From positions 22,630,001 to 22,694,000 of the forward strand of contig NC_047019.1 in the NCBI RefSeq assembly GCF_902652985.1: DNA of 64,000 nt, read 5' to 3'. The first letter of the stretch is position 1, and each line of letters starts with the position of its first letter. The translations under genes were made by a program, and so were the position numbers. Under the pieces are notes generated by a model. The model was not told the DNA's origin. It ran no database searches and worked only from the letters and a program-made list of their open reading frames with translations. This stretch comes from Pecten maximus. Its lineage: Eukaryota. This document shows positions 2,516-8,214 of this stretch, in pieces.

Positions 2516-5500
2516 ATGGATATCCGGCCAAATCAAACCATTTACATCAACAATCTGAATGAAAAAATCAAGAAAGATGGTAAGTATCAAAAAGGAAGTT
2601 ATGCTGATTGTTTAATTGCCTAGAAATCTGCAGTTCCTTGATAAACAAAGTAAATTATGTTTTGTATACATGTATGATTTTAACTAAAAGTAGTGTATTT
2701 GGTCATTCACTATTTATACTTTATTTTACAATTTTTTCAGACCTGAAGAAATCCCTCTATGCTATTTTCTCCCAGTTTGGACAAATCCTGGATATTGTAG
2801 CCATGAAGACACTGAAGATGCGAGGACAAGCGTTTGTTATATTTAAGGATATAAGCAGTGCCACCAATGCTATAAGATCAATGCAGGGATTCCCTTTCTA
2901 TGACAAACCAATGGTAAAATTTATGATGATATGGTTGTACTGCCCGGTGCTCTGATAGCTTGGTGGTGTCGTTAAGACTGTTCGACGCTTTAAGCTAGGT
3001 GGTATGACAAACAGTGATTACTGTAGCAATGGTACAAAAGTGTTCATTAACTGTGTTATTGGAATTGTTTTGAAAGAAATCTTAAGTTTCTGAAACAACT
3101 AAGAATGCTGGTAAACGGGCACACTTGTTTTTGGTTTGCTACCTAAGATGTATTATGCAAAGTAGAACATCACAAATTAAAAAGCTACTGGATATTTACA
3201 ATATACATAGTACATTTAATTGAATATTGTTTTGATAAGTTACTGCTGGTCTGTATTTAAACATAATCTATTTGCAATGTACGGTTTAAATTTTACACTT
3301 GTTTGTAGAGAAGGAAAAAATCACAAGCTTTCTAAAGAAAACAAATGTCAGACAGTGTGTTAACAGTTGATAAAATATTTATATTTTCTTGCAGAGGATT
3401 CAATATTCTAAGAAGGACTCCGACATCATTGCTAAAATAAAGGGCACGTTTGTTGAGCGCCCCAAAAGAAAGAAGGAAGAAGAAGGTGATGTAGCAAAGA
3501 AATCCAAGAAAAAGAGTGCTGCTCAAAAGTAAGCTTTCATAAATTTGTGGTTTTCCTTTTTTTGTTGAAATCATGTTGATAAAGATTTAAGTTGTAAATT
3601 GACCTTGAATTTTATTTTGCATTTAAAGAGAAAATAATTGATTTTGAAATTTTCTCTTTCATATTTAGTGTTGGTACAATCTGATAACTTTGTAGTAGTT
3701 CTTATTATGATTACTACCTACATTAATGTGTTATTGAATTTCCTTTGCTGAAGACCATTTCCTTAAGATTCATTAGTACTTGTCAACAGAAACTTCAGAG
3801 TTTGTTAGTGTGTATGGTACTGGATTAACATACATGTTTTCTGTGTTTTGATAGACAAGCTGCTGCCCCTGTTATGGCTCAAGTACAACCTGTTGCACAG
3901 ATGGCTCCACAAGTACAACCAGGTAAGAATTTAATGATAGATTTGATTCTGTGTTACCGTAGAATTGGCCAGGTCTCTGCTTACTCTAGGCATAAAAATC
4001 CTTTAGCAAAAGTTGCTAAAATACCTTTTTTCTCTTTAGCAAATAAGAAATGGTTTTAGCAAGACAATGTTATTGCTTAGAATTTAATAACTAAATATAG
4101 CACACGCATATTTGTTTGATATATATATATTAATACAATGTGTTAGACTATTTTATTAGTAAAGGCAGGCATTAAAAGTGTTCATTATTTAAGAATTTAT
4201 AAATTACAAAATACTGCCAAATATTATGTTTTACCTCAGCGTAAACAAAAAATATTCAACCAACTAAAAAAGCATTGTATCATACCAAAACAGTTGTGTT
4301 TTAGCGGCTATTATTTTCATATTGAAAAAGAACACACTTGAGATTACACTGAAATAATGTTATTTTCAAACTTGATTTTCAAACCACAACTGATGTTTTA
4401 ATCTTATCATTCCGGGACTTCTTCTTTTTTTTTTTTTTTTTTTTTTGCGAAAATTGAATCGACTGTTCCTATTCCTTTAGATCATATTGGTGATAATTAT
4501 AAGTAATTGGATTTGGAGAATATCTGCTGCATAACCTATTCGCAGCATTTCAAAACAGATGCATTTCCAAATAGATGCTTCATACATAAATCACCCTGAA
4601 CAAATAATTTTGCAGCCCTGTCGCAACGTGGAGTTTACCGTGAATTGTACCTTATGTAATATGTTCGTGATACAAGACATCGAATGATACATACTTGTTA
4701 AATACTAAATAATATTGTACATACAATTAATGAAAGTTGAAATAACATTGAACAGACAATTGTCATTTTGTTTTTAGAGCAACGTAAGCTTGCGGCACAG
4801 GCAGAACATTCGTCTGCCATGGGGTCACAGCTGCCATGTTTTTGCCCAAGTTATCTAAACGCTTTACAAAGCATTGCCCATCAAACAAACGCTCAAATGA
4901 TTCAGATTTATTTAAGTACTTCCGTTTCCGTAACATACATGACATGTGCTAATCATGTAGTTCGATCATAGGATAAGTTAGATGCAATGACATCGTAATT
5001 AGTGAAAATGTAAGTGGTTGAATTAAAGATTTAAGACAGAGGGATATTTATGCAGTCTATAGTATGTCTTAGGTTAAAAACAGTTTCGCAAAAGTTGCGA
5101 AAATACTTAATTATATTTTCGCAATTAGTGATTACATTTCGTGAAATGCGCCAAATGCGATCGATAGCGTGAGCACAGCAGGTTTATTTGATAAATGTGA
5201 TAAGATTATTAAATGGTTAATATTGGAGACAACACGGCGGAAAACGAGGCATCATAAAGTCTACTCTATCAAGACTCGAATTACATTATTAAATGGTTCA
5301 TCTGATTTTCTTATATACTTTGATTTTCGATATGATTTTCTGTACTTGGACTTTCACTTCACCAAATAAGAATAATTTTGATTAACAAGAAATCAGTCTA
5401 AGTTTTGTTTACGTTTTGTTTGTTTACCGACGGTCTCTCTGTTTACAGCTGCAGCAGCCCCTCCCACAGCTGCCGCCCCAGCTCCCACAGCTATACCAGA

Positions 5501-6191
5501 ACAACCACCCAACCAGATTCTGTTCTTGACAAACCTACCAGAGGAAACAAACGAAATGATGTTGTCTATGTTGTTCAACCAGTAAGTTATTAATACATAG
5601 TTTTCAGGTATCAAACATTAAACTGGAAAGTTTGACTTATACTTTATTTCATGGATTAAAATTTATTATTATGATAAGCTGATATGGTATCACAAAACAA
5701 TAATAAGACAGATGTCCTCTTTATAAAATTAACAGCATATAAAATAAACAAGGTCTTTTTAGACATATAGCATATAAATCATTATGGTAAGGTATACAAT
5801 TAAAAAAAATGTATGTTCACTGACACAGGTAAAGTAAGTTTGAATGTTTACCTGTAAAACTGTTTTTATATATGTTTCCTTAAAATATCATAAATCTCCT
5901 CAGTTCTGTTATAATATTTGTTATTCTTTTAACAACTTGTACCGAAATAAAACAGTCTAGACAAGATAAATCATTATTGATTTTTACTATTAGATTACTA
6001 CCATGCTAAATGATTTCATTCCTCTTTGCAGATTTCCAGGATTCAAGGAAGTGCGTTTGGTGCCCGGTCGACATGACATTGCTTTTGTTGAATTTGAAAA
6101 TGAGGTTCAATCAGCTGCTGCAAAGGATGCACTTCAAGGCTTCAAAATCACACCAAGCAATGCCATGAAAATCTCATTTGCAAAGAAATAG
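2516..6191 (+). CDS. SNRPA: U1 snRNP A / U2 snRNP B'' (SNF-type) protein with two RRMs, 243 aa. Coding exons 2516-2579, 2741-2913, 3395-3528, 3855-3922, 5449-5581, 6032-6191
   Basis: Manual splicing with GT-AG introns and consistent phases gives 732 nt: [56 protein letters not shown]...[15 protein letters not shown]..., a Lys/Ala/Pro-rich linker, then [47 protein letters not shown]...[24 protein letters not shown] resembles Drosophila SNF (the single U1A/U2B'' gene). An acceptor at 2509-2510 implies an upstream non-coding exon. Confidence 0.97.
3970..5182. mobile_element. Probable decayed non-autonomous DNA transposon in an SNRPA intron
   Basis: Degenerate inverted ends (CTCTGCTTACTCTA / TAGCGTGAGCACAG) and subterminal palindromes TTTAGCAAAAGTTGCTAAA and TTTCGCAAAAGTTGCGAAA. 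Confidence 0.35.
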
Positions 6192-6592
6192 ACAATGTTC
6201 AAATTGGTGCAATTGTTTGAATGTTTGTTGTGTGTGCATGAATGTGTTAGATTGTGAGTTGTGAATGTAGTATTAGAAAGATCTGGAGGAAGGAACAAAT
6301 TAAGATAAATCTATAAGATCATGATTTATTTTCTCTGTGAAAAGAAATTTTGATTTTTAACACATTGGTATAAACACATAATATCTTAATACTTTCAACT
6401 ATAGAGTTATTAATATCTATGTACTGGGTAACCTGTGCTTCACATTTGATTAACGGCAAAAACATATTTTTAAGGTTTGTATAAAAAAAAATTCATGAGA
6501 TTAAGTTTAAAACTTAAATACTGTCTGTTATCATCCTTTTTGTACATCTCTCAAATATCATCGTAAATTTATTCATCGATTTTCTCTTCAAT

Positions 6593-6985
6593 CCAGCATT
6601 GCACTTGGCTGGTTGTTTCCAATTGTATTGGATCCAATTTGTTTTCGATAGTGAAACCTGTAAGCTGTTGTCAGACATGTCCATTAATGGGTTTTGGTAT
6701 ATTATGAAAAACTTAATTTAGAAATAATATACTTCACATTAGGGGGCCACAAGACCAGAGAATGCAGTTAACATCATTTGGCTGTATGTTGCCCTACTTC
6801 AATAAGAAGCATTGTGGTTTGGATGTCCCAGCTACACAGGTTTCACTGTCACTTTACAGCATTGCACACAGGCTGTACTTTTTGTTGAATTCCGGCATTG
6901 CACCAAGCTGGTACTATTGTTGTATTTGGTGGTCGCGTTGTTTTGGACATTACCAGATATTCCTGGCCTTGCACTCATGTCGGGG
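6593..6985 (+). promoter_or_regulatory. Four U1 snRNA stem-loop II-like hairpins (predicted U1A/SNF binding sites) in the 3'UTR of the U1A/SNF gene
   Basis: 6593-6612 CCAGC-ATTGCACTTG-GCTGG; 6855-6877 TACAGC-ATTGCACACAG-GCTGTA; 6892-6911 CCGGC-ATTGCACCAA-GCTGG; 6961-6985 TCCTGGC-CTTGCACTCAT-GTCGGGG (with G-U pairs). Confidence 0.85.
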
Positions 6986-7028
6986 CTGTCTTGTAATGTA
7001 CAGACATCTGAGGATCACAAGTCTGCTA

Positions 7029-7068
7029 AATAAATGTAAAACATAAAAGGACTTTGTTGTGTTTCTTT
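7029..7068 (+). terminator. Polyadenylation signal of the U1A/SNF gene
   Basis: First AATAAA after the stop codon (7029-7034), followed by a GU/U-rich element TTTGTTGTGTTTCTTT (7053-7068). Confidence 0.7.
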
Positions 7069-8214
7069 AATAGTCCATCACAGTGAAGAAGTGTGGTTTG
7101 ATTTGTGTTACTTTTTATCAGGTGGCCAATCTTTCAGACTTTATCTACATTATATGTTTCATTGTTGATAACTTTATAGGAGTAGCACTGCAGTAATATA
7201 TGTAGTACTAGTCTTATTTTGGAGGTCTAAGTAAGAATCAATTTGCTTTTGTAAACCATAACTTTCTAACTTTATTACATATACTTCTTAATTTATTCTT
7301 ATGCAAAAAATGTCACAATCTCAAGTTCTCGAGTACAGCATTGACTTAAAATAACGAGATTGTCTCCCTTCATTTACAAAGTTTTAAGATGTCAAACTAG
7401 CTATTGCAGAACAATGCATGTCCACCTACCAGGGTTGACAGTCTATCAAGGTTTTAACTTAAACAATTTCGCTCTATGTCTATTTTAGGCAAAATTGAAA
7501 GCTGTTGTTTGCCATTGATTTATTTCAGAAAGAAATAACCTGACCATTCAATATCTGGGCTGATAAATGTTCCCTTAAGACATTGTACTACACCAAATTA
7601 GAATGGCTCAATTTTAAAGTTTTGCTGTCTATGCAATTCCTTTTGTCTTCATTAAAACCATTCTCTTGCATCGTCATGAGTGTGGCAGGTGTAGTCGTCT
7701 GTTTTGTCCAAATATATTCCAATTGTCTTGATAAGATCTGTATATCCAGAGCAAGGGATAAAGACAAGTATCTGAGGAAGAAATATACATCATTTTTATT
7801 TTTAGTAAAAAAAAATTCATCCTACAAAGATACCCTGGACAAGAACCCAACATTTCTCCTGTTTGAATATGAGGCCATTAAGGTCATATCTGCTTATATC
7901 AGTTTCTTATTGATAGCTGAAAGATAGCAATTGGGCTTTGGCCATGTTCATTTTCACTATGATGCAGTAGTAAGTGCATAAAAGATTTTTTTTTTCAAAT
8001 AAGGGGACCGATTACCACTACATAAAAAACCCTTCGAATTCGGAAAACCTCTAGTTATCCACAAGGGGGCACCGATTAATGGAAATCAATAAATTAATTA
8101 TTGATATTGCAAATTCATTTATTGATATCCAAAAATCAAACTTATTTTCTGATATCATCAGTTAAAATTGTAATTTCAATAAATCATTTATTGATATTAA
8201 CAAATGTGCCTATT

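What the first reader, a model, noticed from the sequence alone, without database searches (positions are those of the whole stretch)
6593..7068. U1A/SNF mRNA carries four U1 stem-loop II mimics before its poly(A) signal: candidate non-PIE autoregulation system
Seen: three exact ATTGCAC heptamers within 310 nt of the 3'UTR (6598, 6861, 6897) plus CTTGCAC (6968). Each starts a 10-11 nt loop closed by C-G on a 5-7 bp stem: CCAGC/GCTGG, TACAGC/GCTGTA, CCGGC/GCTGG, TCCTGGC/GTCGGGG. The stems differ in sequence but keep pairing. The last ends 43 nt before the first AATAAA (7029), which has a GU-rich element downstream. I noticed only about five other plus-strand ATTGCAC in the remaining 63 kb, none in such a stem. 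Established: U1A RRM1 binds the U1 snRNA SLII loop AUUGCACUCC closed by C-G. Vertebrate U1A blocks polyadenylation of its own mRNA through the PIE, which uses two asymmetric internal loops (AUUGCAC/AUUGUAC). Inference: this invertebrate single-copy SNF-type gene senses free protein through an array of independent terminal hairpins instead. That would make the feedback either older than the vertebrate U1A/U2B'' split or convergent. I know no description of this architecture but cannot search the literature.
Basis: partly seen in the sequence, partly recalled or inferred. Interest (0 to 1): 0.92.

Follow-up and report, generated by a model that had tools for sequence, protein, structure and literature searches.

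The report
U1-mimic hairpins in SNF/U1A 3'UTR
The mRNA for the scallop's single U1A/SNF splicing protein carries four conserved copies of the RNA hairpin that this protein binds in U1 snRNA, and the same motif is the most over-represented word in SNF/U1A 3'UTRs of many invertebrates. This points to an old self-regulating loop that the papers I could search describe only for vertebrates.

Summary
Window 6593-6985 holds four hairpins with C-G-closed 10-11 nt loops: three start AUUGCAC and one starts CUUGCAC. They lie in the 3'UTR of the only SNF/U1A gene of this genome, whose protein is identical to 'U1 snRNP A-like [Pecten maximus]'. Shuffles expect 0.15 such hairpins per window, and none of 1000 shuffles had three within 500 nt.

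The species' own U1 stem-loop II loop is AUUGCACUCC closed by C-G. Its U2 stem-loop IV has AUUGCAG closed by U-U, so the UTR hairpins are U1-type.

Mizuhopecten and Argopecten keep the hairpins and the AATAAA as conserved islands in an otherwise diverged UTR. A spliced Argopecten transcript runs through them.

In 51 non-redundant SNF/U1A 3'UTRs, ATTGCAC is the top 7-mer: 81 seen against 4.7 expected, sense strand only. These UTRs come from molluscs, Lingula, Capitella, Aedes and environmental eukaryotes. C precedes 79 of the 81 motifs, and 58% sit in U1-like terminal hairpins.

Four independent relatives, including Sinanodonta and Dreissena, instead have two-box, PIE-like stems.

Best reading: these are binding sites for free SNF that give feedback, probably at 3'-end formation. 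Binding and effect are untested. I found no prior description for invertebrates. This is a new variant of a known kind.

The parts
2516..6191 (+). SNF/U1A/U2B''-type gene, coding part. Exons are 2516-2579, 2741-2913, 3395-3528, 3855-3922, 5449-5581 and 6032-6191 (TAG at 6189-6191).
   Evidence: A GT-AG exon chain reproduces database protein P0325 ('U1 snRNP A-like [Pecten maximus]', 243 aa) exactly. Exon 2 is 50/58 identical to Drosophila SNF in PDB 6f4g. Exon 2 is single copy in the genome.
6192..7050 (+). 3'UTR, from the stop codon to roughly the expected cleavage site after AATAAA.
   Evidence: It aligns with the 3' flanks of the Mizuhopecten and Argopecten orthologues. A spliced Argopecten Logan transcript (L006) covers the homologous stretch into hairpin 4. 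Nineteen runs of the species hold 0.40-0.45 of the words of 5400-7400 (four are on record as RNA; the library type of the rest is guessed or unknown). That is more than the 0.355 an mRNA ending before 6590 could give.
6593..6612 (+). Hairpin 1: stem CCAGC/GCTGG, loop ATTGCACTTG (10 nt).
   Evidence: The stem is invariant in three scallop genera. In Mizuhopecten the loop reads ATTGCAT plus a 4-nt tail. Partial Rfam PIE hit over 6589-6634, 22.8 bits.
6855..6877 (+). Hairpin 2: stem TACAGC/GCTGTA, loop ATTGCACACAG (11 nt).
   Evidence: The heptamer is invariant. One A-U to G-U change keeps a pair and the outermost pair is lost in Mizuhopecten. Recovered by RNAalifold.
6892..6911 (+). Hairpin 3: stem CCGGC/GCTGG, loop ATTGCACCAA (10 nt). 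It lies 14 nt after hairpin 2.
   Evidence: The G-U pair becomes G-C in Mizuhopecten. The loop tail varies (CAA, CAG, CGA) while the heptamer is fixed. Recovered by RNAalifold.
6947..6999 (+). Hairpin 4 on an extended stem. Inner stem TCCTGGC/GTCGGGG (6961-6967 / 6979-6985), loop CTTGCACTCAT (11 nt). It is extended by AGATA/TGTCT (6955-6959 / 6987-6991) and ACATTAC/GTAATGT (6947-6953 / 6993-6999).
   Evidence: CTTGCAC is invariant in three genera. Four one-sided changes keep pairs and two changes break a pair. The first loop base is C rather than A, so weaker binding is expected (A1 to G costs 5 kcal/mol in PMC2203988).
7029..7034 (+). AATAAA poly(A) signal, the first canonical hexamer in the UTR.
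   Evidence: Invariant in the three-scallop alignment.
7054..7069 (+). T/GT-rich run, a candidate downstream element of the poly(A) site.
   Evidence: Read. Partly conserved. Function inferred.
6650..6660 (+). 5' arm of a possible long-range helix with 6837-6847. It would loop out the poorly conserved 6661-6836 and bring hairpin 1 next to hairpins 2-4.
   Evidence: The two arms are reverse complements. Both are conserved in scallops, but there is no covariation and 1-2 central pairs are lost in the other genera. Tentative.
6837..6847 (+). 3' arm of the possible long-range helix.

Best explanation
The four hairpins are conserved cis-elements of the scallop SNF/U1A mRNA that copy the protein's own high-affinity target, the U1 snRNA stem-loop II loop with its C:G closing pair. 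When SNF protein exceeds what U1 and U2 snRNPs absorb, free SNF binds these hairpins through RRM1 and lowers output of its own mRNA. Hairpins 1-3 would be strong sites and hairpin 4 a weaker one. The step most likely affected is 3'-end cleavage or polyadenylation at the conserved AATAAA just downstream. Shown here: the motif, its structure, its rarity by chance, its conservation, its presence in mRNA, and its wide recurrence in SNF/U1A 3'UTRs of other invertebrates. Inferred: that SNF binds, that the effect is negative, and which step is hit. I put about 0.8 on SNF binding with a regulatory role and about 0.45 on 3'-end processing as the controlled step.
For: Four strict U1-SLII-type hairpins against 0.148 expected per window, all within 393 nt. 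The species' own U1 SLII loop is AUUGCACUCC closed by C-G, whereas U2 SLIV is AUUGCAG closed by U-U. RRM1 is 50/58 identical to Drosophila SNF, whose complex with U1 SLII is solved (PMC5992148). U1A contacts AUUGCAC and the closing CG pair; A1 to G costs 5 kcal/mol and pyrimidine substitutions cost 1.6-4 kcal/mol (PMC2203988). In scallops the heptamers are fixed, the loop tails vary and the stems keep pairing through six one-sided changes. The hairpin regions are 73-80% invariant against 0-30% for most of the rest of the UTR. A spliced Argopecten transcript contains hairpins 1-3 and the start of hairpin 4. Across 51 non-redundant SNF/U1A 3'UTRs, ATTGCAC is the top 7-mer: 81 against 4.7 expected, z = 35, present in 38 UTRs, antisense count 7. 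Its density is 2.36 per kb in the first 600 nt after the stop, against 0.10 per kb upstream and 0.12 per kb far downstream. C precedes 79 of 81 motifs, and 47 of 81 sit in C-G-closed 10-13 nt terminal loops against 6% of control positions. In Aedes a hairpin with the exact U1 loop sits between AATAAA and a GU-rich run. In vertebrates the same protein family is known to autoregulate through AUUGCAC boxes in its own 3'UTR (PMC6884704, PMC2874999).
Against: No binding, reporter or 3'-end data exist for any invertebrate. Across loci the motifs are no closer to AATAAA/ATTAAA than random placement. In three poly(A)-ended contigs the last motif lies 112-240 nt before the tail. The last 20 residues of poly(A) polymerase, needed for the vertebrate mechanism, are reported as not conserved in flies (PMC9136276). 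The stretch aligned to human U1A 103-112 is only partly similar ([10 protein letters not shown] against ERDRKREKRK). Scallop stems show no double compensatory change. Ixodes has no ATTGCAC within 1.5 kb of the stop, and 13 of 51 UTRs have none, some of them truncated. U1A can also raise expression of bound mRNAs (PMC9136276).
Confidence: 0.7

Rival explanations
1. SNF binds the hairpins, but the effect is not negative feedback on 3'-end formation. The sites might stabilise or retain the mRNA, raise its expression, or act as a nuclear store or assembly platform for free SNF.
For: Tethered or bound U1A more often raises than lowers expression in human cells (PMC9136276). Motifs are not closer to poly(A) hexamers than chance and lie 112-240 nt from the tail in three poly(A)-ended contigs. 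The PAP C-terminus used in vertebrates is not conserved in flies (PMC9136276).
Against: Homeostatic logic and the vertebrate precedent favour negative feedback. In scallops hairpin 4 and AATAAA are conserved together 43 nt apart. In Aedes the hairpin occupies the cleavage zone between AATAAA and the GU-rich run. In L026 and L034 the hexamer starts 4 nt after the hairpin.
Confidence: 0.17
2. The conserved AUUGCAC hairpins are recognised by another factor, or act as pure RNA structure, and their likeness to U1 stem-loop II is incidental.
For: No binding data exist. Hairpin 4 has C at loop position 1 yet is as conserved as the others, so something beyond canonical RRM1 contacts may be selected. 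AUUGCAC is also the seed sequence of the miR-92 family (my own knowledge).
Against: The motif is enriched in the 3'UTR of the one gene whose product binds it, in many lineages. It comes with the C before the box in 79 of 81 cases and mostly a 10-nt loop, as in U1. miR-92 targets would be the reverse complement, which is at background (7 against 81). The stems are too short for miRNA precursors.
Confidence: 0.08
3. The hairpins are neutral relics, such as fragments of retroposed U1 snRNA, or chance matches.
For: U1 genes are abundant in this genome (at least 42 matches).
Against: The stems differ from the U1 SLII stem and from each other. Shuffles never give such a cluster. The hairpins are conserved islands across three scallop genera. 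The motif recurs with unrelated stems in dozens of other SNF UTRs.
Confidence: 0.02

Closest known systems
Vertebrate U1A polyadenylation inhibition element (PIE, Rfam RF00460)
   Same: It lies in the 3'UTR of the gene for the protein that binds it, upstream of the poly(A) signal. It uses several AUUGCAC-type boxes, each preceded by a C that pairs with G. The box context AGC-AUUG(C/U)AC with a GCUG partner is shared with hairpins 1 and 2, which is the basis of the 22.8-bit partial hit.
   Different: The PIE has two boxes in asymmetric internal loops of one stem, binds a U1A dimer, and acts through U1A residues 103-119 and the vertebrate PAP C-terminus. The scallop has four separate terminal hairpins spread over 393 nt, one of them 430 nt from the hexamer. 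It scores below the Rfam cut-off. The protein stretch aligned to human 103-112 is only partly similar.
U1 snRNA stem-loop II, the snRNP binding site of U1A/SNF RRM1
   Same: The loop starts AUUGCAC, the closing pair is C:G, the loop is 10 nt in hairpins 1 and 3, and there is a free 3-nt tail. The scallop's own U1 has AUUGCACUCC.
   Different: The hairpins lie in an mRNA, not an snRNA. The stems are unrelated in sequence. The loops of hairpins 2 and 4 are 11 nt. Hairpin 4 starts with C.
U1A sites at the IgM secretory poly(A) site
   Same: Multiple dispersed U1A sites near a poly(A) signal, acting as separate units rather than one PIE stem (PMC2874999).
   Different: Those sites are relaxed, non-consensus motifs in a heterologous mRNA and serve developmental regulation, not feedback on the binding protein's own gene.
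PIE-type two-box modules found here in other invertebrates (Sinanodonta L008, Dreissena L007, L039/L053, L064)
   Same: The same gene, the same UTR position and the same box with a preceding C. They sit shortly before a hexamer in Sinanodonta (+48) and Dreissena (+61).
   Different: Box 1 is on the 5' strand and box 2 on the 3' strand of one stem, separated by a 3-5 bp helix, as in the vertebrate PIE. The scallop lacks this arrangement. The Rfam PIE model does not hit any of these loci.

Membership tests
Rfam RF00460 U1A_PIE | Covariance-model score at or above the gathering cut-off (50 bits) | tested here: not met
   Best hit is 6589-6634 at 22.8 bits, E = 0.11. It aligns only stem 1, box 1 and the 3' flank and skips 31 model positions. 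Relatives give no hit.
Rfam RF00460 U1A_PIE | Two AUUGCAC/AUUGUAC boxes in asymmetric internal loops of a single stem, separated by a short helix | tested here: not met
   All four scallop boxes open terminal loops of separate hairpins. The two-box detector finds no module in the window UTR, though it does in L007, L008, L039/L053 and L064.
Rfam RF00460 U1A_PIE | Located in the 3'UTR of the U1A-family gene, upstream of its poly(A) signal | tested here: met
   Stop codon at 6189-6191, hairpins at 6593-6985, AATAAA at 7029.
Rfam RF00460 U1A_PIE | Binds two U1A molecules cooperatively and inhibits poly(A) polymerase | not testable with these tools
   Needs EMSA and in vitro polyadenylation assays. 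The protein region aligned to human 103-112 is only partly similar.
U1 stem-loop II-type U1A/SNF RRM1 site | Loop begins with AUUGCAC | tested here: met
   Hairpins 1-3 are exact and hairpin 4 is CUUGCAC. The heptamers are invariant in three scallops, except hairpin 1 of Mizuhopecten, which reads AUUGCAU.
U1 stem-loop II-type U1A/SNF RRM1 site | Watson-Crick C:G loop-closing pair, which distinguishes U1 SLII from U2 SLIV | tested here: met
   All four are closed by C-G. Own U1 SLII is C-G closed and own U2 SLIV is U-U closed with G at position 7. For the relevance of the pair see PMC5992148.
U1 stem-loop II-type U1A/SNF RRM1 site | Loop of about 10 nt with a sequence-free 3' tail | tested here: met
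   Loop lengths are 10, 11, 10 and 11 nt. The tails vary among scallops while the heptamers stay fixed. Across 47 hairpins elsewhere the loop is 10 nt in 28.
U1 stem-loop II-type U1A/SNF RRM1 site | High-affinity binding by RRM1 | not testable with these tools
   Inferred from 50/58 identity of exon 2 to Drosophila SNF RRM1.
[quoted passage not shown] | Two RRMs of the U1A type, with an N-terminal RRM1 close to solved U1A/SNF structures | tested here: met
   The exon chain equals P0325, which carries RRM_1 Pfam hits. PDB best hits are SNF and U1A at E = 3e-30.
[quoted passage not shown] | SNF-type means one gene serves both U1 and U2 snRNPs, with no separate U2B'' paralogue | tested here: met
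   Exon 2 matches one place only in the 918-Mb genome. This is consistent with a duplication only in jawed vertebrates (PMC4114683).

The most novel reading that the evidence does not exclude
Self-binding of SNF/U1A to U1 stem-loop II mimics in its own 3'UTR is an ancestral bilaterian feedback loop that predates the U1A/U2B'' duplication. Terminal-hairpin arrays (scallops, Lingula, annelid-like loci), single hairpins at the cleavage zone (Aedes) and two-box stems (Sinanodonta, Dreissena, vertebrate PIE) would then be interchangeable architectures that arise by duplication and turnover of one hairpin unit. The vertebrate PIE would be a derived special case.
Probability: 0.5. Interest if true: 0.88.

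Novelty: new variant of a known kind. Interest (0 to 1): 0.8.

Why it matters
U1A autoregulation through the PIE is a textbook case of an RNA-binding protein controlling its own mRNA, but it is described as a vertebrate or mammalian feature (PMC5071671, PMC3157836, PMC6884704). The U1A/U2B'' duplication itself is placed in the jawed-vertebrate ancestor (PMC4114683). If single-gene SNF animals already carry U1-mimic sites in their own 3'UTRs, the feedback is much older than the PIE.

It would then have to work without the vertebrate PAP C-terminus. It would also have to balance one protein between two snRNPs.

The varied architectures are natural experiments on how the number, spacing and affinity of sites set a feedback threshold. 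The Aedes and dipteran-like cases make the idea testable in insect cell lines.

Tried and rejected
Protein searches used database proteins restricted to residues 1-160, or window exons 2 and 3. A local BLAST used a masked copy of the window.

Exons were joined only inside a local script to check identity with P0325.

3. The Rfam PIE model gives a sub-threshold partial hit in the window and nothing in Sinanodonta, Dreissena or 16 other loci.

4. Proximity of motifs to AATAAA/ATTAAA across 33 UTRs is not better than random placement (P = 0.16 to 0.69), so it is not used as support.

5. The genome-wide double-box pattern gave 23 hits. Apart from the SNF UTR and one single hit on C17, they are tandem repeats or a repeat family, and the reversed-pattern control gave more hits, so this is uninformative.

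6. miR-92 target sites are rejected because the antisense word is not enriched.

7. A coding reading of the 94-aa ORF at 6762-7046 is rejected because the scallop alignment has 1-nt indels there.

8. U1 pseudogene relics are rejected because the stems are unrelated to U1.

9. The Ylistrum protein is not on record, so no locus was obtained.

10. Four older papers that might mention invertebrate UTRs are not held: PMC2080603, PMC1369347, PMC1369865 and PMC153202.

11. Seven literature searches found no description of such elements in invertebrates.

12. The first homologue search with a copepod-like query listed no molluscs. The second, with Capitella, did.

Full report
THE OBSERVATION. Reading 6000-7400 shows the end of a coding exon (…FAKK, TAG at 6189-6191). 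In the 3' flank, ATTGCAC occurs at 6598, 6861 and 6897 and CTTGCAC at 6968. Each opens a 10- or 11-nt loop closed by C-G on a stem of 5, 6, 5 and 7 bp. ViennaRNA recovers all four stems when each is folded alone. The first AATAAA is at 7029, 43 nt after the last stem, followed by a T/GT-rich run.

ATTGCAC as a word is not over-represented in the window: 14 on both strands against 11.9 expected. The structured form is. A scan for a C-G-closed stem of at least 4 bp with a 9-12 nt loop starting [AC]TTGCAC finds exactly these four on both strands of the 64 kb. Dinucleotide-preserving shuffles give 0.148 per window, never three within 500 nt in 1000 trials, and 0.0012 for UTR-only shuffles. The only correction is that there are six, not about five, other plus-strand heptamers.

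THE GENE. Six exons with GT-AG introns reproduce exactly the 243-aa database protein named 'U1 small nuclear ribonucleoprotein A-like [Pecten maximus]'. The exons are 2516-2579, 2741-2913, 3395-3528, 3855-3922, 5449-5581 and 6032-6191. They were joined only inside a local script for this check.

Exon 2, the core of RRM1, is 50/58 identical to Drosophila SNF, whose complex with U1 stem-loop II is solved (PMC5992148). It matches a single place in the 918-Mb genome. This is therefore a single-gene SNF-type animal, as expected if the U1A/U2B'' duplication happened in the jawed-vertebrate ancestor (PMC4114683).

The genome's own U1 snRNA has the stem-loop II loop AUUGCACUCC closed by C-G. Its U2 stem-loop IV has AUUGCAGUACC closed by U-U. 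U1A contacts the AUUGCAC bases and the closing CG pair (PMC2203988). In SNF the C:G closing pair and the C at loop position 7 are what make U1 SLII the stronger, U2A'-independent target (PMC5992148). Hairpins 1-3 therefore carry every known determinant of the U1-type site. Hairpin 4 has C at position 1, where A to G costs 5 kcal/mol (PMC2203988; the effect of A to C is not given), so it should be weaker.

IS IT IN THE mRNA? I then worked beside them and sent none of those letters to any search tool. Indirect evidence remains. Nineteen runs of the species (four on record as RNA; the library type of the rest is guessed or unknown) hold 0.40-0.45 of the sampled words of 5400-7400. Exon 5 plus exon 6 up to 6590 could give at most 0.355, and up to the AATAAA about 0.59. 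In Argopecten a spliced Logan contig (L006, uninterrupted CDS) runs 720 nt past the stop, through hairpins 1-3 and into hairpin 4.

CONSERVATION IN SCALLOPS. I fetched the orthologous loci of Mizuhopecten yessoensis (L004) and Argopecten irradians (L005). In the three-way UTR alignment the hairpins and the AATAAA are islands. In 30-nt bins, 73-80% of columns are invariant over 6582-6641 and 6852-7001. Most of the rest of the UTR shows 0-30%.

Argopecten keeps all four hairpins. Mizuhopecten keeps hairpins 2 and 3, has AUUGCAU in hairpin 1, and has one A-C mismatch in hairpin 4. The heptamers stay fixed while the loop tails vary freely (UUG/UUA; ACAG/ACG; CAA/CAG/CGA; UCAU/CCUA/ACCU). That is the signature expected for a site read through its first seven loop bases. 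Six one-sided substitutions keep pairing, two break a pair, and there is no double compensatory change. RNAalifold on the three species recovers hairpins 2 and 3 and a long irregular hairpin 4 spanning 6947-6999.

BEYOND SCALLOPS. Further loci came from named genomes: Dreissena, Sinanodonta, Haliotis, Octopus, Lingula, Capitella, Ixodes and Aedes. Eighty environmental contigs encoding SNF relatives were added. I located the stop codon in each by local tblastn.

Pooling 51 non-redundant 3'UTRs (49 kb), an unbiased count of all 7-mers puts ATTGCAC first: 81 against 4.7 expected, z = 35, present in 38 UTRs. The overlapping words CATTGCA and GCATTGC come next, and the reverse complement is at background with 7. 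Density on the sense strand is 2.36 per kb in the first 600 nt after the stop. It is 0.10 per kb upstream, 0.12 per kb beyond 1.5 kb, and 0.15 per kb antisense.

C precedes 79 of the 81 motifs. Forty-seven lie in C-G-closed terminal loops of 10-13 nt (28 of them exactly 10 nt), against 6% of control positions. Stems differ between lineages but are alike within an array, for example five GTCATC-type hairpins in annelid-like L024 and five GACAAC-type in L038. This suggests growth by duplication of a hairpin unit. Lingula has three such hairpins, Capitella one and Octopus one.

Four independent loci carry two-box stems of the PIE type: Sinanodonta, Dreissena, L039/L053 (which share one module) and L064. 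In these, box 1 is on the 5' strand and box 2 on the 3' strand, separated by a 3-5 bp helix. That is five of 48 close box pairs against 0.26 in flank shuffles. In Aedes a hairpin with the exact U1 loop AUUGCACUCC sits directly between AATAAA and a GU-rich run, where cleavage should occur. Ixodes has none within 1.5 kb, and 13 of 51 UTRs have none, several of them truncated. Taxon labels of the environmental loci are only nearest-hit guesses. None looked vertebrate or human.

MECHANISM. The simplest reading is the vertebrate logic transferred: free SNF binds mimics of its snRNA site in its own message and reduces output. The controlled step is open.

For 3'-end formation: the conserved hairpin 4 and AATAAA pairing in scallops, the Aedes arrangement, hexamers starting 4 nt after the hairpin in L026 and L034, and short distances to the hexamer in Sinanodonta, Haliotis and Dreissena.

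Against: pooled over 33 UTRs the motifs are no closer to hexamers than random placement. Three poly(A)-ended contigs have the last motif 112-240 nt before the tail. The PAP C-terminus used in vertebrates is reported as not conserved in flies (PMC9136276). The stretch aligned to human U1A 103-112 is only partly similar. U1A can also enhance expression of bound mRNAs (PMC9136276).

COMPARISON WITH THE KNOWN. The element works like the PIE in logic and in the box it uses, but it is not a member of Rfam RF00460. It scores 22.8 bits against a cut-off of 50, and its boxes are in terminal loops, not internal loops. It is a member, by sequence and structure, of the U1 stem-loop II type of RRM1 site; binding itself is untested.

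Reviews and primary papers in the searchable library describe the PIE as conserved in vertebrates or mammals (PMC5071671, PMC3157836, PMC6884704, PMC2874999). Seven searches found no account of invertebrate equivalents. Four older papers that might comment on the Drosophila gene are not held, so an earlier mention cannot be excluded.

VERDICT. The feature is real, non-random, conserved and transcribed. It is a new architectural variant of U1A-family autoregulatory elements, and the first sign in this analysis that such elements are widespread in protostomes. Function is inferred, not shown.

Noticed in passing
window 6222-6251: A block about 30-60 nt after the stop codon is about 90% invariant in three scallop genera. 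It holds UGCAUG and GU repeats and may be another conserved UTR element unrelated to the hairpins.
   Followed up: no
window 6650-6660 and 6837-6847: Two conserved 11-nt arms are reverse complements. Pairing them would loop out the poorly conserved middle of the UTR and bring hairpin 1 next to hairpins 2-4. There is no covariation, and the central pairs break in the other scallops.
   Followed up: partly
L008 15245-15570 (Sinanodonta woodiana): Five ATTGCAC boxes are arranged as one single-box and two two-box stems that share a GCTTGGC/GCCAAGC outer helix, followed by AATAAA 48 nt after the last box. This is a PIE-like architecture in a freshwater mussel.
   Followed up: partly
L095 3735-3790 (Aedes aegypti): A 9-bp hairpin with the exact U1 loop AUUGCACUCC sits immediately after AATAAA and before a GU-rich run. 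A second locus in the older assembly (L096) has the same CDS, but its 3' flank diverges about 50 nt after the stop and lacks the hairpin.
   Followed up: partly
L009, L010, L011, L013: A Vps26 gene lies head-to-head upstream of the SNF/U1A gene in Haliotis, Octopus, Lingula and Ixodes, which suggests old microsynteny. I did not check whether the window's upstream flank holds it.
   Followed up: no
G000 C6:28765717-28766649, C10:27671668-27672670, C6:19377891-19377993: Tandem repeat arrays whose units each carry GCATTGCAC. They account for most genome-wide double-box hits.
   Followed up: no
G000 C18:22103706-22193663 and C10:23655185-23735266: Large tandem clusters of U1 genes (C18) and U2 genes (C10).
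   Followed up: no
L024 (4296+178 to +363) and L038 (1408+77 to +352): Environmental annelid-like and unidentified contigs each carry five tandem U1-type hairpins about 40-85 nt apart with near-identical stems. This suggests that arrays grow by local duplication.
   Followed up: partly
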